A stretch of 64,000 bases of DNA from Hypanus sabinus. Taxonomy: Eukaryota. The stretch's first letter is position 1. The number at the start of each line of letters is the position of its first letter. Shown piece by piece: positions 24,674 to 51,191 of this stretch. The stretch covers positions 49,600,001 through 49,664,000 of the forward strand of contig NC_082715.1 in NCBI RefSeq assembly GCF_030144855.1. The letters run 5' to 3'. Position numbers and translations under genes: made by a program. The notes beneath the pieces were generated by a model, which worked only from the letters and a program-made list of their open reading frames with translations, had not been told where the DNA came from and did not search any database.

Positions 24674-27600
24674 AGACAATAGGTGCAGAAGTAGACCATT
24701 CAGCCCCTCGAGTCTGCACCGCCATTCTGAGATCATGGCTGATCATTCACTATCAATACCCAGTCCCTGCCTTGTCCCCATATCCCTTGATTCCCCTATC
24801 CATCAGATATCTATCTAGCTCCTTCTTGAAAGCATCCAGAGAATTGGCCTCCACCGTCTTCCGAGGCAGTGCATTCCACACCTCCACAACTCTCTGGGAG
24901 AAGAAGTTCTTCCTCAACTCTGTTTTAAATAACTGACCTCTTATTCTCAATCCATGCCCTCTGGTACTGGACTCTCCCAACATCTGGAACATATTTCCTG
25001 CCTCAATCCTATCAAATCCTTTAATTATCTTAAACGTTTCAATCAGATCCCCTCTCAATCTCCTCAATTCCAGCGTGTACAAGCCCAATCTCTCCAATCT
25101 CTCTGCGTAAGACAGCCCTGCCATCCCAGGAATCAACCTAGTGAATCTACGCTGCACTTCCTCAAATGCCAGAATGTCCTTCCTTAAACCTGGAGACCAA
25201 AACTGTACACAATATTCCAGTTGTGGTCTCACCAGGGCCCTGTACAAATGCAAAAGGACATCCTTGCTCTTGTACTCAATTCCCCTTGTAACAAAGGCCA
25301 ACATTCCATTTGCCCTCTTCACTGCCTGTTGCACTTGCTCATTCACCTTCATTGACTGGTGAACTAGGACTCCTAGGTCTCTTTGCATTTCTCCCTTACC
25401 TAACTCGACACCATTCAGACAATACTCTGCCCTCTTGTTCCTGCTTCCAAAGTGGATAACTTCACATTCATTCACATTGAATGACATCTGCCAAGTATCT
25501 GCCCACTCACCCTGCCTATCCAAGTCTCCTATCGTCCTCTTCGCATGTCACACTGCCACCCAGTTTAGTATCGTCAGCAAACTTGCTGATATAGTTTTCA
25601 ATGCCCTCATCTAAATCGTTGACATAAATCGTAAAGAGCTGTGGTCCCAATACAGAGCCCTGTGGTACCCCACTATTCACCTCCAGCCAGTCCGAGAAAC
25701 ACCCATTCACTGCTACCCTTTGCTTTCTATCTGCCAACCAGTTTTCTATCCATGTTGAAACCCTGCCCCCAATGCCATGAGCTCTGATTTTACTCACCAA
25801 TCTCCTATGTGGCACCTTATCGAATGCCTTCTGAAAATCTAGGTATACAACATCCACTGGCTTACCCTCGTCCAACATCCTTGTTACACCCTCAAAAAAC
25901 TCCAACAGATTAGTCAAGCATGGTTTGCCCTTGGTAAATCCATGCTGACTCGGCCTAATCCTATTTCTGCCATCAAGATGTGCCACTATTTCGTCCTTAA
26001 TAATGGACTCAAGCATCTTCCCCACGACTGACGTTAGGCTAACAGGGCGATAGTTCTCCGTTTTCTCCTTCCCTCCCTTCTTGAAAAGTGGGATAACATT
26101 AGCCACTCTCCAATCTTCAGGAACTGATCCTGAATCTAAGGAACATTGGAAAATGATTACCAATGCATCCGCAATTTCCTGAGCCACCTCTTTTAGAACC
26201 CTCAGATGCAGACCATCTGGACCCGGGGATTTATTAGCCTTCAGTCCTACCAGTCTACTCATCACAGTTTCTTTCCTGATGTCAATCTGTCTCAGTTCCT
26301 CTGATATCTTATGACCCTGGCCCATCCATACATCTGGGAGATTGCTTGTGTCCTCCCTGGTGAAGACAGATCTAATGTACGCATTAAATTCTGTTGCCAT
26401 TTCCCTGTTTCCCATAACAATTTCTCCCAATTCATTCTTTAAGGGGCCAACATTGTTTTTAACTATCTTCTTTCTCTTCACATAGCTAAAAAAGCTTTTG
26501 CTATCCCCTTTTATATTCCTGGCTAGACTGAGCTCATACCTGATTTTTTCTCTCCGTATTGCTTTTTTAGTTAAGATCTGCTGTTCCTTAAAACTTTCCC
26601 AATCATCTGTATTCCCACTCATCTTAGCCCTGTCATACTTCTTTTTCTTTAATGCTATACAATCTCTGACTTCCTTTGTCAACCACTGTGGCCCCTTCCC
26701 CCTCTTTGAATCCTTCCTTCTCATTGGAATGAACTGCTTTTGCATCTTTTGTATTATGCCCAAGAATATCTGCCACTGCTGATCCACTGTCTTTCCTGCC
26801 AGGGCATCCGCCCATTTAACTTTGGCCAGCTCTTCCCTCATGGCTCCGTAGTCTCCTTTATTTAATTGCAACACTGACACCTCTGATCTGCCCTTATCCC
26901 TCTCAAATTGTAGATAAAAACTTATCATGTTATGATCACTACTTCCTAATGGCTCCTTTACTTCAAGATCACTTATCAATTCCTGTTCATTACACATCAC
27001 CAAGTCCAAAATAGCCTCGTTCCTGGTTGGCTCAAGCACAAGCTGTTCCAAAAATACATCCCTTAGACACTCCACAAACTCCCTATCCTGGGGTCCAGCA
27101 CCTACCTGATTCTCCCAGTTCACCTGCATCTTGAAATCTCCCATAACGACTGCATTACCTTTAACACATGCCAATGTTAACTCCCTAATCAACTTGTACC
27201 CAATATCCTCGCTACTGTTTGGGGGCCTGTACACAACACCCATTAGGGTCTTTTTACCCTTACTGTTCATCAGCTCAATCCACACAGACTCTACTTCCCC
27301 TGTTCCCAAGTCACCTCTTGCTAAGGACTGAATCTCATTCCTCACCAACAGGGCCACCCCACCCCCTCTCCCCATATTTCTGTCTCTACGATAGCACGTA
27401 TACCCTGGTACACTCAATTCCCAGGCCTGATCCCCTTGCAGCCATGTCTCCGTTATCCCAACAATATCGTAGTTCCCCATTTTCATCTGAGCTTCAAGCT
27501 CATCTGTCTTATTTCTGACACTACGCGCATTCAAGTATAGAATTCTTAGCCCGTTCCTCCTCTCTTTGCTTAAAACACTGTCTACTGTACCTAACCCAGC

Positions 27601-28082: not shown

Positions 28083-28316
28083 AAGTTATGCAAGTGTATG
28101 AAATGAAATAGCCTTAAACAGTACAATAAACCGTGATATATTAGCCTTTCGTGTAAACCATGCTGATAAAGAGATGCCACGTCCAATATTTTGCCAACAG
28201 CAATGGTACAGCGTTTCCTGATCATTTTAATGCATTTAAGGATATTAGGCTTTAATCATTTTTACACGCACTTATGGCTGTCATGATTTCTAAGAAGGGT
28301 TATGTGGTATTTCCAG

Positions 28317-28429
28317 GAATGCTCCAGAATGGCAAGAAGTTTGACTCTTCTCGAGACAGAAACAAGCCTTTCAAGTTCAAAATTGGCAAACAGGAAGTGA
28401 TTAAAGGCTGGGAAGAAGGCATGGCACAG
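28317..28429 (+). CDS. FKBP1B: FKBP prolyl isomerase 1B (FKBP12.6), coding exon 3
   Basis: ttccag|GA ATG CTC CAG AAT...GCA CAG|gtattt. The 113-nt phase-1 exon encodes (G)[39 protein letters not shown] at positions 31-32 is the FKBP12.6 signature (FKBP12 has ED). Confidence 0.95.
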
Positions 28430-28867
28430 GTATTTTTGGATGAACATAATTTCAGAATTATCTTACTATAAAGGCTGTACAGTAAATATTTTATGGATAT
28501 TTGGAGTCTTAAGATCATATTAAATACTTAACGTGTCTCTTACTTATTCATTAAAACATTTAAAGATGCATATTTCATCTTAAAGTTGCATCAACACCAA
28601 ATGTATTTTGGTTTAACTATGTGGGCTGAAAAATCACTAATCAAAGAGCTGAGCTTTGAGGCCAGAACAGTTTAAATGAAATCCAACTTGATTTAGTCTT
28701 CAAAAGAGGATGCTGAAGGCATGATGAAATGGAAGAGAGAGTTTGCCAATGACAAAATAAGAGCATCAGATAAGAACTTTTTTCTACTATGGAAGTTGCA
28801 TATTTTACCACATAGGAATAGGGTGTAAGCTGAGGAATTCCACTAATAATCAAAATTGTTTCAATAA

Positions 28868-28999
<132 letters not shown>

Positions 29000-30037: not shown

Positions 30038-31205
30038 TTCAGAAGGCATTCGATAAGGTGCCACATAGGAGATTGGTGAGTAAAATCAGAGCTCATGGCA
30101 TTGGGGGCAGGGTTTCAACATGGATAGAAAACTGGTTGGCAGATAGAAAGCAAAGGGTAGCAGTGAATGGGTGTTTCTCGGACTGGCTGGAGGTGAATAG
30201 TGGGGTACCACAGGGCTCTGTATTGGGACCACAGCTCTTTACGATTTATGTCAACGATTTAGATGAGGGCATTGAAAACTATATCAGCAAGTTTGCTGAC
30301 GATACTAAACTGGGTGGCAGTGTGACATGCGAAGAGGACGATAGGAGACTTGGATAGGCAGGGTGAGTGGGCAGATACTTGGCAGATGTCATTCAATGTG
30401 AATGAATGTGAAGTTATCCACTTTGGAAGCAGGAACAAGAGGGCAGAGTATTGTCTGAATGGTGTCGAGTTAGGTAAGGGAGAAATGCAAAGAGACCTAG
30501 GAGTCCTAGTTCACCAGTCAATGAAGGTGAATGAGCAAGTGCAACAGGCAGTGAAGAGGGCAAATGGAATGTTGGCCTTTGTTACAAGGGGAATTGAATA
30601 CAAGAGCAAGGATGTTCTTTTGCATTTGTACAGGGCCCTGGTGAGACCACACCTGGAATATTGTGTACAATTTTGGTCTCCAGGTTTAAGGAAGGACATT
30701 CTGGCAATTGAGGAAGTGCAGCGTAGATTCACTAGGTTGATTCCTGGGATGGCAGGGCTGTCTTACGCAGAGAGATTGGAGAGATTGGGCTTGTACACGC
30801 TGGAATTGAGGAGATTGAGAGGGGATCTGATTGAAACGTTTAAGATAATTAAAGGATTTGATAGGATTGAGGCAGGAAATATGTTCCAGATGTTGGGAGA
30901 GTCCAGTACCAGAGGGCATGGATTGAGAATAAGAGGTCAGTTATTTAAAACAGAGTTGAGGAAGAGCTTCTTCTCCCAGAGAGTTGTGGAGGTGTGGAAT
31001 GCACTGCCTCAGAAGACGGTGGAGGCCAATTCTCTGGATGCTTTCAAGAAGGAGCTGGATAGATATCTGATGGATAGGGGAATCAAGGGATATGGGGACA
31101 AGGCAGGGACTGGGTATTGATACTGAATGATCAGCCATGATCTCAGAATGGCGGTGCAGACTCGAGGGGCCGAATGGTCTACTTCTGCACCTATTGTCTA
31201 TTGTC
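30038..31205 (+). mobile_element. Young 5'-truncated CR1, ~99% identical to the 24674-25835 segment, in inverted orientation
   Basis: ORFs 30007-30357 and 30350-31120 repeat the RT/C-terminal peptides of the minus copy. Ends in a ctattgtctattgtc tail. Confidence 0.97.
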
Positions 31206-40011: not shown

Positions 40012-40349
40012 TATACGTGTGTGTGGTGTATTTATACTGATATCCTATATGGGTTTGTTGACTTGTATGCATCAAGCTGCAGCATAGTGGGGTGGGATGG
40101 GTGGTTCAGGTGGGCATTGGGACTCTCATTACATGATTGTGGCCTTGTGTGTGCTTACTGTGTGTGACTAGGTAAAATGTCTTTTCACCTCAAGCCATAG
40201 TAACGGTGTTTCCTTTGGCTGTATTCATATATGGTTAAATGACAATTAAACTTGAATTTGTAGAATATACGGTGTAGAGGAAACTTTAAAGCTAATTACA
40301 AGCTGAGAATGGAGTCTGTGTGATTTTTGTTAAGTTAAAATGAAAACCT

Positions 40350-41243
40350 GTATAATTCCATATGATTATGTAAATTCTCTGTTATCTCTCTTACCCGGAC
40401 TTTTCTGTTTTCCCCAATACATTAACTTCACTGAATCTCAATAGCAGGGCACCAGGTGTAAGCAGTCAGTATTGTTGGTAGAATTATTAGAGTTTAAAAA
40501 CTCATTTGGTACTGGAATGAAGGTGGTAATTGCATTGGATTTTGCACTGTGAATGCTGAAGGTTATGACATAACAGCAGAGGAGCAGAGACAGCAACTTC
40601 TGGATTTTAACTGAATATCTACTGATGCTAAAAGGTGTCACAATGACTTGGAAATAAATTCAGGTCTTTACTGTCTCAAAGTTAGTGTTACTTCATATCC
40701 CAGATATTTTCTCCAGTTCATAGTTGGTTCATACAGAGATTGTGATACTTTGGCTTTAGGTTTAGGTTTGAGCAGCCCTGCAGTTTTCTAAAATATCATC
40801 AACCAAGTATGTTGTAATGGTCTTTCCAGAAATATTAATACCCAGTTGCCCAATCTTCATGTTGTCTGAAGAGTCATGTAACAAGAGCTTTTTAGTCATA
40901 AGTCTGATTAAGTATCTGCATTAGAAGATGGGAGAAAAGGAAGATTATTCGATTTCTGCTTCCCAACTAAAAGCAAAAGCAGTGTTTCAGTCAGAAATCA
41001 GAAACCTTTTGGCCGTTCATTCTTTTGCAAATGGATTTGCTGAATATTAGGCATACTTGAAGGTGTTACTGAGTAGAGCAATATCATGTTACACGTATTG
41101 GATGATACAGCAATTGTGCATCAGTGAGGGTCAAAACATAATAAATCAGGAACCAGAATCCCAGGTATGCTTGCTTTTCTAGTTGTTGTCACTTTTCTCT
41201 CAAAAGTTACAAGAATCAGACGTGAAGAATCACGACCACTTCC
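40350..41243 (-). pseudogene. WDCP: WDCP pseudogene, distal part of the large coding exon
   Basis: [105 protein letters not shown] matches human WDCP TGQDSSHLVLVTF...IPGILVPDL...SNTCN...PNIQQI...ERPKGICFLT...VGKQK...FLPSS. Stops at 41121-41123 and 40998-41000; frameshift at ~40910. The lower boundary is uncertain. Confidence 0.9.
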
Positions 41244-41420
41244 TGTTGTCTTTACATATCAATTAAGTAAAAGCACGCAGGGGAGATGGCTTTAATTGGT
41301 GTATTCACATTGCAGTGAGAGAGAGATCAATGCGCATGCACAGACAATAGTCCGTGGGTAGAGCTAAGGGGCGTCATTGCTCTAAAAGAAATAAATCGAT
41401 ACATTACACTTCCTCCCCCT
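41244..41420 (-). mobile_element. Short Gypsy-type LTR (165 bp) with adjacent polypurine tract
   Basis: Minus strand reads agggggaggaag (PPT), then TGTaatgt...aagacaACA (41408 to 41244). Confidence 0.65.
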
Positions 41421-41526
41421 TGAGATTAATGTAACAAAATTGTATATGTACAAAACTTTCAATTTGCCTTTTACAAATCATATTCAAATAAAAAATGAGA
41501 AAATATGCAGATGCTGGAAATCTGAG

Positions 41527-41922
41527 TGTAATGCCTTGGGAAAGATTTCAGTGAATCTTATGGTCTTTCTGTAGAAGCAGTATTTGGGTTATGGTTAGAG
41601 ATAATGGATGCTTTGGAATGTGTGCCATCTAATCAGGGGAGAGGGCTTTTTTATGTGAGCTGGGGCCTTTGTTTGGTGGGAGATAGAGAGAGAAAACACT
41701 GGAGAGAACCAATCATAGGATTCGACCCAGTAGGAAACCGTGATTTGATGGAGCAATGTGTGGAGGTATATTGAGGATCAGTGAATATGACTTTTGGAAG
41801 AGTTGAGCTCCAACTTGTGCATATTTGACAGTTTAATCATAATGGTCCCTTTTTGTTTTTCTCTTTCTTTTCTTTACTAACCCTTTAGTTAACATTAATA
41901 AACATAATTCCTTTAATCGTAT
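41527..41922 (+). mobile_element. LTR-like fragment
   Basis: Starts tgtaatgcc and has AATAAA near its end. No coding similarity is recognisable. Confidence 0.35.
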
Positions 41923-42975
41923 TCACTGTGCTTCATAGAGCACCTCTGCTCCATCCATAAAAAGCAGAACTTCCTGGTGGGTAACCACTTTAATTCTGAC
42001 TCCCATTCCTGTTGCAACATGCCAGTTCATGGCCTCCTCTTGTGCCAAGACGAGGCCACCTTCTAAATGGAGGAGCAACATTTTATATTCCTTCTGGGTA
42101 GCCTCAAACCTGATAGTATGAATATTTATTTCTCCTTCCAGAAATTCTTTTCCCTCTCCCACCCCTCTGGTCGCCTCACTATAGGAAGGATGTGGAAACC
42201 ATAGAAAGGGTGCAGAGGAGATTTCCAAGGATGTTGCCTGGATTGGGGAAAATGCCTTATGAGAATAGGTTGAGTAAATTTGGTCTTTTCTCCTTGGACT
42301 GACGGAAGATGAGAGGTGACCTTATAGAGGTGTATAATATGATGAGAGGCATTGATCATGTGGATAGTCAGAGGTTTTTCCCCAGGGCTGAAATGGCTGC
42401 CACAAGAGGGCACAGGTTTAAGGTGTTTGGGTGTAGGTACAGAGGAGATGTCAGGTGTAAGTTTTTTACTCAGAGAGTGGTGAGTGCGTGGAATGGGCTG
42501 CCAGTGGTGATGGTGGAGGTGGAAACGATAAGGTCTTTCCAGAGACTCCTGGATGGCTACATGGAGCTTAGAAAAATAGAGGGCTATGGGTAAAGCCCAG
42601 GTAGTTCTAAGGTAGGGACATGTTTGGCACAGCTTTGTGGACCGAAGGGTCTGTATTGTGCTGTAGGTTTTCTATGTTTCCTTTATTCCCCACTCTAGCC
42701 TTTTACCTCTTCTTTCCTGCCTATCACTTCCCCCTAAGTCCCTTCCTTCTTCCCCTTCTCCAGCCCTTTGCCTTTCCCACCCTCATAACTTCGTCTATCA
42801 CCTAACCTCCTTCCCCTCTCCCTATCTTTTTATTTTAGCGTCTTCCCCCTGACTTACCAGTCCTGAATAAGGGTATAGGCCCAAAACGTTAACTGTTTAT
42901 TTATTTCCATCAATGCTGCCTAACCTGCTGTGTTCCACCAGCATTTTGAATGTGCTACTTTGGATTTCTAGCTTC
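41923..42975 (+). mobile_element. Penelope 3' end/pLTR interrupted by a CR1 3' fragment (42168-42680)
   Basis: GIY-YIG end (..EEQHFIF.LGSLKPD.MNI.FS.F), CR1 RGDLIEVY..MRGID, and a pLTR tail with a decayed hammerhead at ~42862. Confidence 0.8.
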
Positions 42976-43240
42976 TAACGTGCTTTTTATACAGTTGTGC
43001 TACAGTTTGTGTATAACAAACAGACCCTAATGAAGCCCATCCAAATGTTCAAAACTTCCAAGAACATTGCTGTCTTCAAATTTTATCTCACCATTGACAA
43101 GGTAAACAGCAGTGAGGGCAACTTGCTCTCCATCTGCCCAGGCAATCCCATGAATTGGATGAACAGCTTGATGCAATACACTAATTCCAGTTCGCAGCAA
43201 TTTTGCTTTTCCGAGCTCCATGCTGACCAGCTTCAGAATC
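42976..43240 (-). pseudogene. WDCP: WDCP pseudogene, start of the large coding exon
   Basis: Acceptor ctccag|G at 43240 and ATG at 43221. [37 protein letters not shown]...[21 protein letters not shown] matches human [37 protein letters not shown] at 43027-43029 replaces a conserved Trp, followed by a frameshifted KKHV and a TE junction. Confidence 0.93.
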
Positions 43241-43451
43241 CTGGAGGTTATAAGACAGCAAATGAAAATCACTACTAACCAGTGTTTTTCTTCAATGAAT
43301 CTTACTCTTCAAGGCCTTAGCACAGCATATATATGATTAAATCAAAGGAAATTAATTTGCTAATGTCTGCATAACAGCAGATAAATGTTCATCTTACTGT
43401 GGTGAAAGTTAGAAAGGTGTAACCTTCACTAAGCAGCAGTCTGTTGCTTAC

Positions 43452-43476
43452 CTAAGACTTGTTCAATACAGCTATC
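43452..43476 (-). other. Candidate 25-nt non-coding micro-exon in WDCP intron 1
   Basis: actttcctttttag|GATAGCTGTATTGAACAAGTCTTAG|gtaagc on the minus strand. Confidence 0.35.
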
Positions 43477-44824
43477 CTAAAAAGGAAAGTTGCTGGATCT
43501 CATTGAATCCAGAATGAGACTTGAACTCAATAGAAATTCAGGCACTATTCTTTTCCCCAAGTTAAAAATAATGGATATTTTAAATTCTCACAAATAATTA
43601 CCAAGTAAATCAATCAAATACAAAATAATGGAAAGGCTTGGTCTTTCCGCTGCAATAAATATAACAGGAAATGTATTTTTCAGCTGCTTTTTGAAGAGCA
43701 AAAGAAAACAAACAGAAAAGCCAACTTTGTTAAATTTTATATAAGCTCTTCTATGATACAACTTCTTACAATGAAAATCCTGGATGAAAATTTACCATAA
43801 TGTATTTTTAATCCCACGTTTATCAATAACTGACAGTGGTGATAGTTTTTCTTGCTCACAGTGGTAGAAGTCATATGTAGATATAAAGCAGGTCTCGAAT
43901 TAGATAAAACCAAACTAGCCCAAGAATGAAATGATACTGAAACTAGCTCATAGATGCTAGCAATAAAACTAAAAGAGGGCAAAATGGTGAAAACATAATT
44001 ACAATTGAGCAGTGTAAAGGATGCTCACTAATGACAAAGTATAAAGTTTTAATGTACTACCAGAAATGATATGGTTTATATTTAAATCATATGTAGGTGC
44101 TATACCACTATATAACTTCTATAAATCTCAAGTATTCTTTTATGCTTTAAGCATCAGTTGCAACACAAATTGTTAAAGTCTAATACATATTGCTCTGTGA
44201 TTAGATCTCACATTTCTTTCTCAATGCCAGAATATTTTAAAAATGTATCTTTCAAAACTCTTCATTTTTTGTAGTCTCCGATCAATGCACAGCTGATGCA
44301 CGTAGGCAATTGTACGAAGGCTAAGCTTTAAAACATCATCCATTGATTCACTGAAGCATGTGAGAAAAAGGATCCTTATGCTAACATTCACAAAAGAATA
44401 TATACATGACTGTATACATCACCCTTCAATAACTAATGTCCAAACAGGAGCCTGAACAAAATGGATTACTTCCCATATCTCTAAAGCCACTTTGTAACAA
44501 AAGCTGATAGAGATGAGGAAGGAGCAGTGTATTCAGTGCATCACCACAGCCTTTGGCTGTCCAAGGAAAAAAGTATTTGAAGGTAAAAGTTTACAGCATA
44601 CCAGGCAGCAGTGATCCTGCTCTCCCACACACGTCTGTAACTATCTATACTGTAGTAGGGATATTAAAGCACATTGATGCTGGCTCTGTGAAATCCTCCA
44701 AATCCACTGCCAAATAAGTGAAACAATCCAGCAGCCTCTCCCAAATCAACAACCCTAGTGCCAAGTCCCTAATTATACTCAGGTGGATAAAAACCACAAA
44801 CTTTTCCAGCTGCCACCAACTGGG

Positions 44825-45912
44825 AAATGGCTGTGGCAATAAATTTTACAGATTCACCACTCATTGGCTAAAGAAATTCGACCTCATCTCCGTTCTGAAA
44901 GGATGCCCCCTATTCTGAGGCTGTGTCCTCTGGTCTTACACTTGCCCACCATAGGAAACATACTCTCCACATCCACTCTATTGAGGCCTTTCAACATTCG
45001 ATAGGTTTCAATGAGGTCACCCCTGTCTTCTGAATTCCATTGAGTACAGGCCCAATGCTATCAAACTCTCTTCATATGACTAGCCTTTCGATCCCAGAAT
45101 CATTTTCATGAACCTCCTTTGAACCCCCTCCAATGTCAGCACATCCTTTATGGGGCCCAAAACTGCTCACAATACTCCAAGTGAGGCCACGCCAGTGCTA
45201 TATAGGGCCTCTCAGCATTATATTCTTGCTTTTATATTCTAGTTTTCTTGAAATGAATGCTGACATCACACAAACGCCTTCCTCACCACTGACCACACAC
45301 TTCCTGACAGTGTATTCCATTAGCCACTTTGCCTATTTCCCTAATCTAAGTTCTTCAGTAGCCTCTCTACTTCCTCAAAACTACCTGCCTCCCATCTAAC
45401 TTTGTATGATCTGCAAATTTTGCAACACAGCCATCAATTTCACTCATCCAAGTCATTGACATATAACGTAAAAAGGAGTGGTCCCAACACAGACCCCTGT
45501 GGAGTACCACTAGTCACCGGCAGCCAACCAGGAAAGGCTCCCTTTATTCACACTTTTGCCTCCTGCGAATCAGCTACTGATTTATCCATGCCTGATTTTC
45601 CCTTGTGGAATCCAATCTGACTCAGGCCTATTTTATCATGTGCTACCAAGTATCCCGAAACCACGACGTTAATAATCAACTCCAACATCTTCCCAGCCAC
45701 TGAGGTCAGATTAGCTGTGCCATAATTTCCTTTCTTCTGCAACATCACACACTTCTGCTCCCATGACACTCTCAAACTTCCAGCTTACTGCTAGTGTCTT
45801 CCACAGTGAAGACATATGCAAAATACTTATTCGGTTTGTCTGCCATTTCCCTGTCTTCCATTACTACCTCCAGCATCATTTTCCAGTGGTCCCATATCCA
45901 TTCTTGCCTTTT
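44825..45912 (-). mobile_element. CR1 LINE fragment with multiple deletions
   Basis: KYFAYVFTVED, GKMLELII and [13 protein letters not shown] remnants. Confidence 0.8.
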
Positions 45913-46424
45913 ATATTTTATATACTGGTTGAAGTGCTTGAAATATTTTACTGCATTGATAATATTATGCAGATACATGTTTGTCAAATAAGCAACAGAT
46001 TAAATAAAAAGCTGTTGCAATCATTGTTTATTCCAATAATTAATACCGTTGGACAAGTTAAAGTGAAGTTAATTCACTAAGACAATCACAGTTCCAATCT
46101 TTGAGATGCCTGGTCTAAAAAAAATCAGTGGCTCTAACCCAGTATATATTACAAACTGAGAGCCTATAGATTTTTAATTGCTTCAATAATTCCAAAATTA
46201 AGGTATTACTTTTCCTTTCAGGAACTACAAGCTAGGAATTTGTACTCACAGTTCTTCACACAGTTGTGAGATTAGTTACCAGATCATTTTAATGTGCTCA
46301 TTCACAAGATTGAATGTCATCAATAATCAGCAGCACTGGTCATTGCTACAGGTCATTTACAGGTCATTGCTAAAAGTCTGCTGAAGTAAACTGTATGCTG
46401 GACAATTTTAACCGGCATTTATAA

Positions 46425-46640
46425 GTCACAAGATTTCCTTGCCTGAATGGTATTAGTGAATTAGATGGGTTTTTACAACAATCCAGTCCAGTCATTTCAA
46501 ACAGTCACCATTATGGACATTAGATATTTAAGTCAGTAATTATTTAGTTACTTAAATTTTAATTCTCCTGTTGTTAATTAATGTGAGGGTTCAAAATCCA
46601 ATGTCTCTAAAGGTCTAGTAATTTAACTGCTCTGCTACAT
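46425..46640 (-). mobile_element. tRNA-derived shark-type SINE, degraded
   Basis: atttccttgcctgaa...attagtgaa..agatgggtttttacaacaatcc...gtcaccatta. A related copy lies on + at ~58800-59080. Confidence 0.5.
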
Positions 46641-46669
46641 TACAGTATTTAAGTGATAATCTTAGATCA

Positions 46670-46762
46670 GGACATGGGATCACTTACATGACCCTGAGGA
46701 ATTACAGAATCATTATTTAATGTTTAGTTCAGACAGTACACCACTCCCTCAATGCTGCACCC
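46670..46762 (-). mobile_element. DeuSINE/AmnSINE-like remnant
   Basis: catgggatc.cttacat...tttaatgt...gacagtaca.cactccctca.tgctgcac resembles the Deu-domain reverse complement (from recall). Confidence 0.4.
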
Positions 46763-47519
46763 ACAGGACCATAAGGTGTAAGTAGATCATTGAAAAAGAC
46801 CTTGGCAAATCTGATTCATTCACCACTTTCTCCCCCTTTCCCCAATATTCTTATAATTACAAATCTTACATTTACATGTACACAACGATTTTACTCCCAC
46901 AATTCTCTGTGGCATGGAGTTCCAAAGAAATCCTTCCTCACATCAGTACTAAATGGGCACCCCCTCATTCTGAGACTATGCCCTGTTTTTGGACTTCCTT
47001 GTGAAAAGAAACATCCTGTCAGTATTTTACCAATCTAACTTCCTAACAATCTTAACTTTGAGTCAATCCCTACCCCCCCCCCCATATCTAGAATCATCCA
47101 AATGAACCTTAAAAACAAGCTGTTTACTGCAGTCTCTCTCGTGCAGTAGGGATGCCTTTCTTTTACACTGCAACCCTTTTAAGTTAATACCAATCTCCCA
47201 ATGCCCCTTTGCTGCACTTGTCCAAGCTTTCAGTATTTTGTATACAAAACGCCCCAAATTCTTTTACGCTGCAGATGTTTGCAATTTTCTCTATCTTCGT
47301 CCGCCTCCCAAAATAATCAACCTAGCATTTTAACTTGAATCCATGAATGAACCAGACTTTCAGTAGTAGATGAAAGAAATGTGGATTGGGGAACTGTTAC
47401 AGTGTTGGATGTGAGTAGTCTTGAGCTTCTTAAGCATTTCTTCCCTTCCACAATCACTGAACGTTTGGGAAAGGGATGGGGGAATAAAGGCTCCTTCGCC
47501 TTTGGCATGGCTTCACTAC

Positions 47520-47810
47520 TCCCGGGCAATGACCCGTCCACCACTAAAGAATCCGGGCAGCCCTGACTCACCCTTCGCCCTCTCACTTTTTTTGTCGGTT
47601 TCCCCTCAACAAAAGCAGCCTAACGCCTCGACGGAAACATCGTCATGGCAACCGCTGCACTTCCGGTCAAGCGGAGCTGGAACTGGCGGGGTGGGGGGGC
47701 GACAGTATTCCTGAGAACCTTCCCCTGGGCTGGAGTCGTCAGGAGGTATGAGTGCGGTTAACTGTGGAAATAGCAACGTAACACATCCTTGCTGCTAAAA
47801 TGGCAGGAGA
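47520..47810. promoter_or_regulatory. CpG-rich, probably bidirectional promoter
   Basis: Local CpG cluster; ETS site ACTTCCGG at 47659-47666; RFX X-box-like ATCGTCATGGCAAC at 47639-47652; G-rich GC box at ~47687-47700; outward-facing donors AGG|GTGAGT (minus, 47572/47571) and GAG|GTATGA (plus, 47745/47746). Confidence 0.75.
47572..47660 (-). other. WDCP: Probable non-coding exon 1 of WDCP (pseudogene)
   Basis: Consensus donor gg|gtgagt upstream of the ATG-containing exon, matching the WDCP layout of a non-coding exon 1 plus a large exon 2. The TSS is not determinable. Confidence 0.6.
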
Positions 47811-48149
47811 GCATACACATTGCCGCCACTTTCCCAATAAATCAACCTGCGTTGTTTTGGTCATATTTTCCATTTCCTTGTTCGATGGAGGGCTGAGCGT
47901 TTTAAAATTTTTTTAAATGACCCAAAAATCAGCCAATCCAAAACTACCCGAATGACCGTCCACCAAAAGCATATCAAACAACATGCCGGAAAATGAAAAG
48001 CCATATATTTATTAAGCAAGAACAAAGACTATGCGCTCGTGGTATACAAATCATTTTGAATTGGATAAAGCAATGGTCTGTACCCAAGTATTTTTTCAGA
48101 AATTAAAAAAACAAAAATTGCCGTAAGTTTCAATTGGCCAGTAGCACCT

Positions 48150-49758: not shown

Positions 49759-51191
49759 TATTATGTTTTGTAACTTCAAAACATTAAACTAATTCAAAGG
49801 AAGACACAGGAGTCTAAAATGTGAGTCTACCATCATGTTCGCTTGAAGCAAGGTGTCAAGTATCACTTGGTAGAGTCATTACATATGGAATTCTTGTATT
49901 TTTACATATAACCCATAGTGAGTTATTTAAATGAACAAGATTGATTAATCGAACATTATTTACAATATCACTCAAATATTACTTAAATATTAAATAAACA
50001 CCACTCCACCCTGCTTAGCTATAAACTCCATCTCAATATAGAATGCATCTCAACTACATTTGTATATACAGTATACTATATAATAAAACTACTATATTCA
50101 GGCATCCACAGGATAGTATATATTAATTTGATCCAGTCAGGCCCAAGGATTTAATTGCTGTGGAAGATTTCTTACTCTTGTGGATAATATCTTTCCTGAC
50201 AGCTGCTTGGTAGGTGAGACAGCTCTGGACACCCTACTTTCTAGTACTTTCCTTTTTCTTCTTCTAGTTTGTGCATCTTGATCTTGGAAAGGTGCATTTA
50301 GTTCACTGGAGTATTATTAATCCTCCTATTGCTACCTTTACAATCTGAACTCTCCTCTTGGTTTCAGCATCCTGCTGGGCTTTGGTCTTTGCATCTACTT
50401 CTACAAGCAGCTTTCTGTCTCCCACTTGAAGTTCATGTAATAACCTTAATGCACACAGAGTAGATTCTGGTTCTTTAAACTCACAAAAGCTGAATGCTTG
50501 CAACTTAATGATGTTCCTTGAACTCTCTTCTAGCTTAAAATGAAGCCATATTTTGCAAGTAACTACATGATTAACATATCAGAAGCTTTCTCAGATACGT
50601 TGCCTAGAAAAATTGTTGTAGTCAGAACATTGCTTTTGTCATTTCCACACTTCCTCTGAGGGGCATGATCCATCCCTGGTCCAAAATACTTTCCAACTGG
50701 AGGAACAGAGGGTCAGCACCTGTTTGGCCTCTGTTGGCCCATGGTTCATGATGTACAGCATGGAGACAGTTGCAACAGCATCCAGTACCATTCTTAATTC
50801 ACTTTCAGTTGAGGCTATTGCAAGGACGTGACATGCAAATGGTGGATGGATCTCTAATCAAGTTGCAGTTGCCTCAACCACTCACGTCCCCACAAAGCTG
50901 GCCCTCCTGATTTTACCCTTGATATGTTTGAATTTTCAAATGCCAATCTTCAATACTGCTGTGCTGTAACTTCAAAATGTTAAACTAATTCAAAGAAAGA
51001 CATGGGAGTCCGGAATGTGAGTCTAACTTCTTGTTTACTTTAAGCAAGGCACTGTGTATCACATGATAGTGTCATGATGTATATAATTCATGTATTTTAC
51101 ATATAACCCGTAGTGAATTATTGAAATAAACAAGAATGCTTAATCAAACAATGTTTACAATTTTACTCAAGTATTACTCAAATACACAACA
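49759..51191 (-). mobile_element. Non-autonomous Gypsy-derived LTR element carrying an RBM25 retro-fragment
   Basis: Direct repeats of ~240 bp at 49759-50003 and 50957-51191. PPT-like aagcagggtggag abuts the 3' LTR. Protease-end remnant VKSGGPALWGREWLRQLQLD*RSIHHL at ~50830-50920. Integrase C-terminal remnant ERYYP.RVRNLPQQLN at ~50140-50200. Confidence 0.85.
50240..50720 (-). pseudogene. RBM25: Processed RBM25 fragment (RRM and flanks)
   Basis: VGKYFGPGMDH...TTTIFLGNVSEKASDMLIM*LLAKYGFILS*KRVQGTS/KLQAFSFCEFKEPESTLCALRLLHELQVGDRKLLVEVDAKTKAQ...ETKRR...YSSELNAP matches the RBM25 RRM (TTVFVGNISEKASDMLIRQLLAKCG...LQAFGFCEYKEPESTLRALRLLHDLQIGEKKLLVKVDAKTKAQ). No introns; contains stops and frameshifts. 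Confidence 0.9.

What the first reader, a model, noticed from the sequence alone, without database searches (positions are those of the whole stretch)
40350..47660. WDCP appears dead at its syntenic locus: candidate unitary pseudogene (lineage-specific gene loss)
Seen: an intron-containing WDCP (exon 1 donor, exon 2 acceptor 19 nt before the ATG) with a Trp->TAG at codon 65, at least two more stops and two frameshifts. Roughly 220 codons of the WD-repeat region are missing and replaced by 1.7 kb of LTR/Penelope/CR1 sequence. No downstream coding exons are recognisable. Established: WDCP neighbours FKBP1B in human (2p23) and has been linked to lymphatic/vascular development and kinase scaffolding. 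Inference: because it sits next to FKBP1B this is probably the orthologue, so WDCP may be lost in this lineage. Annotation pipelines would miss it.
Basis: partly seen in the sequence, partly recalled or inferred. Interest (0 to 1): 0.8.

Follow-up and report, generated by a model that had tools for sequence, protein, structure and literature searches.

The report
Broken WDCP gene copy in stingray
The window holds a truly dead, transposon-riddled fragment of the WDCP gene, but it lies on the wrong side of its neighbour FKBP1B and related rays carry a second, less damaged version, so loss of the gene from this lineage is not shown.

Summary
On the minus strand, four pieces match the WDCP family (Pfam PF15390, E 7e-29 to 5e-7). 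They cover profile positions 1-62 and 310-421. They are broken by TAG at codon 65 (43029-43027), TGA at 41123-41121, TGA at 41000-40998 and a 4-nt deletion at 40913/40914. About 220-250 codons are replaced by 1.7 kb of high-copy transposons. The two small last exons are nowhere in the window. A CpG island and a good donor and acceptor fit a retained promoter, exon 1 and intron.

The reading as a unitary pseudogene is only partly supported, for two reasons.
- **Position.** In bowfin and fugu, WDCP lies head-to-head with FKBP1B and tail-to-tail with MFSD2B. Here the fragment is tail-to-tail with FKBP1B exons 3-4. No FKBP1B exon 1 sits at its CpG island and no MFSD2B is present.
- **A second version.** Contigs of four related rays (about 2-7% diverged) each show two versions. 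One carries the window's 4-nt deletion. The other keeps the 4 nt and ancestral residues.

The TGA at 41123 is specific to the window; all four relatives read CGA.

Most likely this is an old, partial duplicate pseudogene shared among rays. Whether an intact WDCP exists elsewhere was not testable.

The parts
47400..47850 (.). CpG island, the strongest in the window; presumed WDCP promoter, possibly bidirectional
   Evidence: CpG observed/expected is 0.66-0.93 with 15-17 CpG per 300 bp, against a window mean of 0.23.
47572..47660 (-). Putative non-coding exon 1 ending in the donor AAGG|GTGAGT (start not defined)
   Evidence: Read from the sequence. No RNA evidence was available, so this is inferred.
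43241..47571 (-). Putative intron 1, holding CR1-type LINE fragments (44825-45903)
   Evidence: Repeat copies elsewhere in the window. AG acceptor at 43242-43241 after a pyrimidine tract.
43030..43221 (-). WDCP codons 1-64, open
   Evidence: PF15390 profile 1-62, E 6.9e-29. 71% identical to bowfin.
43027..43029 (-). Stop 1: TAG where orthologues have Trp (codon 65)
   Evidence: Alignment to nine orthologues. No difference was listed here in four related runs, but the list is incomplete.
42977..43026 (-). Weakly WDCP-like tail with a second TAG at 43002-43000
   Evidence: Read by eye against orthologues. Not statistically supported.
41259..42976 (.). 1.7 kb transposon block replacing about 220-250 codons. 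It includes a Penelope-like 3' end (about 41930-42160) and a CR1 3' end (42166-42690), both on the plus strand.
   Evidence: Copies elsewhere in the window. Contig depth of 10^3 to 10^6 in four runs, and unique-depth contigs stop at 41243 and at 42925-42939. TE class names are from reading the ORFs, not from a TE library.
41124..41258 (-). WDCP coding remnant (profile 310-350)
   Evidence: E 8.7e-18.
41121..41123 (-). Stop 2: TGA, specific to the window's genome (CGA, Arg, in relatives)
   Evidence: 41123 A>G at full depth in all four runs. Codon effect computed.
41001..41120 (-). WDCP coding remnant (profile 354-391)
   Evidence: E 1.6e-18.
40998..41000 (-). Stop 3: TGA where orthologues have Cys
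   Evidence: Alignment. Contigs of all four runs cross it and no difference is listed, which is weak evidence that it is shared.
40914..40997 (-). WDCP coding remnant (profile 394-421)
   Evidence: E 4.7e-7.
40913..40914 (-). Frameshift: 4 nt missing (relatives have AACG on the plus strand in about 30-50% of depth)
   Evidence: Table 4. Adding the 4 nt joins ...SSNAD to RYLIRLMTKK..., as in bowfin SSNTDKYIIRLMTKE.
40858..40917 (-). WDCP remnant in the shifted frame (bowfin aa 427-446)
   Evidence: tblastn E 0.075; own HMM positions 426-444, weak.
40350..40857 (-). Presumed rest of the big coding exon; homology not demonstrable
   Evidence: No profile hit. Orthologues have a poorly conserved stretch here, and the exon would end near 40270-40350 by length.
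28316..28999 (+). Context: FKBP1B exons 3 (28316-28432) and 4 (28868-28999), convergent with the WDCP fragment
   Evidence: PF00254 hits. 86-87% identity to fugu FKBP1B exons.

Best explanation
The stretch is a non-processed, partial and long-dead copy of WDCP. It keeps a promoter CpG island, a putative non-coding exon 1, intron 1 and parts of the big coding exon.

It cannot make WDCP protein, for these reasons:
- a nonsense codon at position 65
- two further in-frame TGA codons
- a 4-nt frameshift
- replacement of most of the WD-repeat region by 1.7 kb of transposons
- absence of the last two exons, which encode the end of the coiled coil and the C-terminus

It lies tail-to-tail with the last exons of FKBP1B, not head-to-head with FKBP1B exon 1. 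That fits a local partial duplication or transposition of the WDCP 5' part that was truncated from the start. It does not fit simple decay of the orthologue in place.

The same decayed copy (4-nt deletion, same transposon borders) is present in related rays, so it is old. Those rays also hold a second, less decayed version. The window's own copy has since drifted neutrally: it has one private CpG-to-TpG stop and private non-synonymous changes at conserved residues.

Shown here: the lesions, the arrangement, and the two versions in relatives. Inferred: the duplication mechanism, the exon 1 assignment, and that the second version lies elsewhere in this genome.
For: - **WDCP pieces and lesions:**
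- **Ancestral order:** FKBP1B and WDCP head-to-head, WDCP and MFSD2B tail-to-tail in bowfin and fugu.
- **Order in the window:** FKBP1B exons 3-4 on the plus strand at 28.3-29.0 kb. Exons 1-2 and MFSD2B are absent.
- **Two versions in relatives:**
  - Every one of four runs from four differently labelled organisms has AACG behind 40913 in only part of the depth (5.47/11.8, 20.1/49.1, 5.67/11.2, 7.4/24).
  - Two runs have two overlapping contigs at 40355-40754, one about 2% and one about 7% plus indels from the window.
  - Their depths add up to that of the single contig over 40963-41243.
  - The version with AACG also has Asp and Ala at 40946/40940, as in orthologues.
  - A 1056-nt contig of run X4 matches 40963-41243 and then continues 775 nt unlike the window's transposon block.
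- **Shared transposon borders:** unique-depth contigs stop at 41243 and at 42925-42939.
- **Neutral drift in the window's lineage:** 41123 is CGA in all four relatives. At codons 14, 32, 46, 49 and 54 and at 41173 the relatives keep the residue seen in bowfin and teleosts, and the window has a derived one.
- **CpG island:**
Against: - No sequence of the second version could be fetched, so its place, extent and intactness are unknown.
- No difference was listed at stop 1 or stop 3 in any run. In three runs a single contig crosses stop 3. If the tables were complete, both versions would share these stops and both would be dead. The tables are demonstrably incomplete: a difference between the two versions must exist near 40962 and is not listed.
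- Two versions could in principle be very divergent haplotypes.
- No chondrichthyan reference arrangement was available, so a different ancestral gene order in cartilaginous fishes is not excluded.
- No copy of the flanks was found inside the window that would mark a duplication unit.
Confidence: 0.55

Rival explanations
1. WDCP function is truly lost in this ray clade. The gene died first, and the dead gene was then duplicated or rearranged. Both versions seen in relatives would be pseudogenes and no intact copy would exist.
For: - At 80% likeness only two versions were laid on the conserved coding blocks in four runs, and no third, intact-looking type appeared.
- Single contigs with summed depth cross the TGA at 41000-40998 in runs X1, X4 and X26. 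No difference from the window is listed there, nor at the TAG of codon 65.
- The last two exons are missing.
- No note of another WDCP copy exists in the 1365 annotated windows of this genome.
Against: - WDCP is kept from lamprey and invertebrates to mammals, so the prior for loss is low.
- The second version keeps the reading frame at 40913 and ancestral residues.
- On the lineage of the most distant run, the conserved coding blocks show about 2 private changes in roughly 300 nt. The adjacent non-conserved 355 nt show 9 or more. That hints at purifying selection, though the numbers are small and the tables incomplete.
- The difference tables hide rows.
- Annotated windows cover only a few per cent of the genome.
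Confidence: 0.25
2. This is a single-copy unitary pseudogene at the orthologous locus. The locus was merely rearranged, and the two versions in relatives are divergent haplotypes or mixed samples.
For: - FKBP1B is within 12 kb.
- Intron and promoter are retained, so it is not a retrocopy.
- The depths of the two versions are near 1:1 and add up to the depth of the shared contig, as alleles would.
Against: - The versions differ by about 5-7% plus many indels, far above allelic variation in vertebrates.
- The same 4-nt indel would have to be heterozygous in four individuals of four differently labelled organisms.
- The orientation to FKBP1B is opposite to that in bowfin and fugu. FKBP1B exon 1 is missing next to the CpG island.
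Confidence: 0.12
3. The lesions are assembly errors in an otherwise intact gene.
For: No run of the window's own species was among those offered. The best holder shares 0.41 of sampled words and is about 2-2.5% diverged, so the private TGA at 41123 has no independent confirmation.
Against: - The frameshift and the transposon borders recur in independent data from related organisms.
- The missing 220-250 codons and missing last exons are structural, not base errors.
- Differences from relatives are mostly transitions, as in real divergence.
Confidence: 0.03

Closest known systems
WDCP (C2orf44), WD repeat and coiled-coil-containing protein, Pfam PF15390; e.g. bowfin P0139, teleost P0003
   Same: The N-terminal 64 residues and residues about 304-446 are 71-75% identical to bowfin. 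The ATG lies a few bases into the big coding exon, as in bowfin. FKBP1B is nearby.
   Different: - At least three in-frame stops and at least one frameshift.
- Profile positions 63-309 and 422-694 are absent.
- Opposite orientation relative to FKBP1B.
- No MFSD2B downstream.
Duplicated (non-processed) pseudogenes made by partial segmental duplication
   Same: Keeps promoter, intron and exon structure. It is truncated at one end and lies close to the parental neighbourhood. A second version exists in related genomes.
   Different: The parent copy and the duplication borders were not seen. No duplicated flank is visible within the window.
Unitary pseudogenes (e.g. GULO in primates; from general knowledge)
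   Same: Disabling mutations in a gene that is functional in other vertebrates. The lesions are shared among related species.
   Different: A unitary pseudogene sits in conserved synteny and has no other copy. Here synteny is broken and a second copy is indicated.

Membership tests
WDCP family (PF15390), by descent | Significant match to the family profile above Pfam's gathering score (25.3 bits) | tested here: met
   Four pieces score 101, 64, 67 and 29 bits. The result was confirmed with an HMM of my own.
WDCP family, as a functional gene | Uninterrupted reading frame over the big exon plus the two last exons | tested here: not met
   Stops at 43029-27, 41123-21 and 41000-40998, a frameshift at 40913/14, profile positions 63-309 and 422-694 missing.
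Unitary pseudogene | Disabling lesions | tested here: met
   As listed in the row above.
Unitary pseudogene | Lies at the orthologous position in conserved gene order | tested here: not met
   Bowfin and fugu have FKBP1B head-to-head and MFSD2B tail-to-tail. The window has FKBP1B exons 3-4 tail-to-tail, no FKBP1B exon 1 and no MFSD2B. Caveat: no cartilaginous-fish reference order was available.
Unitary pseudogene | No other copy of the gene in the genome | tested here: inconclusive
   The assembly could not be searched. Four related runs each show two versions of the stretch.
Unitary pseudogene | Functional orthologues in other lineages | tested here: met
   Annotated full-length WDCP exists in teleosts, bowfin, frog, mammals, lampreys and invertebrates. 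None from cartilaginous fishes could be retrieved, which says nothing either way.
Processed (retro) pseudogene | Intronless, with a poly(A) tail and no promoter | tested here: not met
   An acceptor lies 19 nt before the ATG, a donor and CpG island lie 4.3 kb upstream, and there is no 3' end or poly(A). The intron is inferred and not shown by RNA.
Duplicated non-processed pseudogene | A second, related copy in the same genome | tested here: inconclusive
   Shown for four related organisms, not for the window's own genome.

The most novel reading that the evidence does not exclude
WDCP, a gene kept from invertebrates to mammals, has been functionally lost in a clade of stingrays for tens of millions of years. 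Both surviving copies would be dead, while the promoter CpG island is still maintained, perhaps for another transcript.
Probability: 0.3. Interest if true: 0.45.

Novelty: new member of a known kind. Interest (0 to 1): 0.3.

Why it matters
WDCP is a poorly understood, widely conserved scaffold protein. In the literature held here it appears mainly as an ALK fusion partner. A natural knockout in a vertebrate clade would be a useful clue to how dispensable it is.

My evidence shows a real and old pseudogene. It also shows that the step from 'dead copy next to FKBP1B' to 'gene lost' is unsafe here, because gene order is rearranged and a second copy exists in relatives. As it stands this is an ordinary duplicated or rearranged pseudogene. 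It is of interest mainly for annotation, and it warns against calling unitary loss from one window.

Tried and rejected
- **Cartilaginous-fish WDCP protein:** several attempts to fetch one failed.
  - The representative search with the 64-aa N-terminus gave teleost, tetrapod, lamprey and invertebrate representatives only.
  - The search with teleost P0003 listed only teleosts in its top 120.
  - A profile of Lingula WDCP plus the window's pieces, meant to lift rays to the top, returned only 38 hits and no fishes. The word prefilter failed.
  - The 93-aa open N-terminal frame found nothing.
  - An exact look-up of the 81-aa ORF found nothing.
- **Earlier notes of this scan:** none mentions another WDCP copy, MFSD2B or other 2p23 neighbours.
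- **Papers:** nothing on WDCP in sharks or as a pseudogene.
- **Protein atlas:** no usable hit.
- **Lamprey and frog WDCP loci:** no called neighbour within 10 kb, so they give no outgroup for gene order.
- **Rebuilding one relative's sequence for 40385-40739:** applying the listed differences put the window's two frames into one frame, but three stops remained and there was no WDCP homology. This was not interpretable.
- **SF3B6 motifs (typed from memory):** not found in the window.
- **Bacterial promoter/terminator scan:** irrelevant here.
- **Single-inversion models,** including one through the inverted CR1 pair around FKBP1B exons 3-4: considered and rejected, because none reproduces the observed order and strands.
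Full report
**What is there.** The window is vertebrate DNA rich in CR1 and Penelope-type repeats. An earlier follow-up note of this scan calls the genome a stingray (not tested by me).

On the minus strand, stop-free pieces match the WDCP family profile PF15390 well above its cut-off:

| Window coordinates | Profile positions | Score or E-value |
|---|---|---|
| 43221-43030 | 1-62 | 101 bits |
| 41258-41124 | 310-350 | 64 bits |
| 41120-41001 | 354-391 | 67 bits |
| 40997-40911 | 394-421 | 29 bits |

- tblastn with nine orthologues gives 71% identity to bowfin over residues 1-66 and 75% over residues 316-426. A further 20 residues follow in another frame.
- An HMM that I built from 24 WDCPs, run with all filters off on every stop-to-stop piece of the window, finds these pieces and nothing else.

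**Lesions.**
- Codon 65 is TAG where all orthologues have Trp.
- A TGA lies at 41123-41121.
- A TGA replaces a conserved Cys at 41000-40998.
- Four bases are missing at 40913/40914.
- A second TAG lies at 43002-43000, in a weakly homologous tail.
- Between 42976 and 41259, 1.7 kb of repeats stand in place of about 220-250 codons. The repeats have copies elsewhere in the window and depth of 10^3 to 10^6 in four runs.
- In bowfin, fugu and frog the gene has one big coding exon (residues 1 to about 620-640) and two small last exons. Neither small exon is detectable between FKBP1B and the fragment, or anywhere else in the window.

**Promoter and intron.**
- The ATG is preceded by an AG acceptor 19 nt upstream.
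- A donor AAGG|GTGAGT lies at 47572/47571.
- Around it is the strongest CpG island of the window, with observed/expected 0.7-0.9 against 0.23.
- This is not a retrocopy.
- Exon 1 and the intron remain inferences, because no RNA run was on record.

**Synteny.**
- In bowfin (L001) and fugu (L002) the called genes are FKBP (108 aa) head-to-head with WDCP, and an MFS transporter (MFSD2B by position) tail-to-tail with it. From memory, human is the same.
- In the window, FKBP1B exons 3 and 4 lie at 28316-28432 and 28868-28999 on the plus strand. They therefore converge on the 3' side of the WDCP fragment.
- FKBP1B exons 1 and 2 are not in the window, even with lenient matching.
- MFSD2B is not there either.
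- Both flanks of the fragment therefore differ from the ancestral bony-fish order.
- No single inversion, including one through the inverted CR1 pair that brackets FKBP1B exons 3-4, gives this order.
- A tandem or local partial duplication of the WDCP 5' part does give it, with or without FKBP1B. It would also explain the missing last exons as truncation at the duplication border.
- I found no duplicated flank inside the window.
- I had no cartilaginous-fish reference order.

**Related rays.** No run of the same species was offered. The best holders share 0.35-0.41 of sampled words. I laid Logan contigs of four runs from four differently labelled organisms on 40300-43400 at 80% likeness.

1. 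**Stop 2 is private to the window.** All four runs read G at 41123, making the codon CGA (Arg). The window's stop is a CpG-to-TpG change.
2. **Two versions exist in every run.**
   - Only part of the depth has AACG behind 40913, which restores the WDCP frame (SSNAD-RYLIRLMTKK, as in bowfin).
   - The contigs with AACG also carry Asp and Ala at 40946/40940, the residues of other vertebrates.
   - In runs X1 and X4 two overlapping contigs cover 40355-40754. One is about 2% from the window; the other is about 7% away with many indels.
   - Their depths (22.7 + 16.8 in X1) add up to the depth of the single contig over 40963-41243 (39.1).
   - The same indel in four organisms, and 5-7% divergence, argue for paralogues rather than alleles.
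3. **The transposon borders look shared.** Unique-depth contigs stop at 41243 and start at 42925-42939. One 1056-nt contig of X4 runs on for 775 nt beyond 41243 with sequence unlike the window. The second version may therefore lack this transposon block.
4. **The window has drifted on its own branch.** At six coding sites where the window differs from the relatives, the relatives hold the residue seen in bowfin and teleosts. The window holds a derived, non-synonymous one. That is neutral drift.
5. **Stops 1 and 3 are unresolved.** No difference is listed at either codon, and single contigs cross stop 3 in three runs. Taken at face value, both versions share these stops. However, the tables omit rows: contig difference counts exceed the listed rows. 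A difference near 40962, which the contig ends require, is also not listed. I treat this as weak evidence.

**Reading.**
- The fragment is certainly a pseudogene.
- It is old: related rays up to about 6-7% diverged share it. Given slow elasmobranch rates, that means roughly tens of millions of years (inference).
- Its position and the second version make a partial duplicate the most likely origin (0.55).
- Functional loss with both copies dead remains possible (0.25).
- A single-copy unitary pseudogene is less likely (0.12).
- Assembly error is very unlikely (0.03).
- Across these readings, I put loss of WDCP function in this lineage at roughly one in three.

**What failed.** I could not fetch any cartilaginous-fish WDCP protein or the relatives' contig sequences. 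I could not search the rest of the assembly. Earlier notes of the scan hold no other WDCP copy, but they cover only about 1365 windows.

**Verdict.** This is a new member of a known kind (pseudogene) of modest interest, unless a whole-assembly search shows that no intact WDCP exists.

Noticed in passing
window 24756-25547 (-) and 30326-31117 (+): Two CR1 copies in inverted orientation encode the same 264-aa ORF apart from a few residues, and they bracket FKBP1B exons 3-4. The left one continues into a 755-aa open ORF (27783-25519).
   Followed up: partly
window 50306-50578 (-): An open frame that looks, from memory, like the RRM region of the splicing factor RBM25 (...FCEFKEPESTL.ALRLLHELQVGDRKLLV.VDAKTKAQ...). 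Pfam gave no hit.
   Followed up: no
window 47645-47748 (+): On the other strand of the CpG island there is a 34-codon ATG-started open frame ending in a good donor (AGGAG|GTATGAGT). It is not FKBP1B exon 1. It is possibly the first exon of an unknown plus-strand transcript, which would explain why the island is kept.
   Followed up: no
window 1-28315: FKBP1B exons 1 and 2 are not in the window. Either intron 2 exceeds 28 kb or the gene is itself rearranged here.
   Followed up: partly
protein P0001: A 557-aa WDCP filed under Lampetra planeri on a 38-kb contig is teleost-like at its N-terminus and unlike the true lamprey WDCPs (P0027 cluster). It is probably fish contamination in that assembly.
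   Followed up: no
window 40963-41243, in runs X1, X4 and X26: The two versions seen in related rays appear identical to each other over this 281-nt conserved coding block within each organism. Yet the block differs between organisms (for example 41001 and 41095). That pattern suggests gene conversion between the copies.
   Followed up: partly
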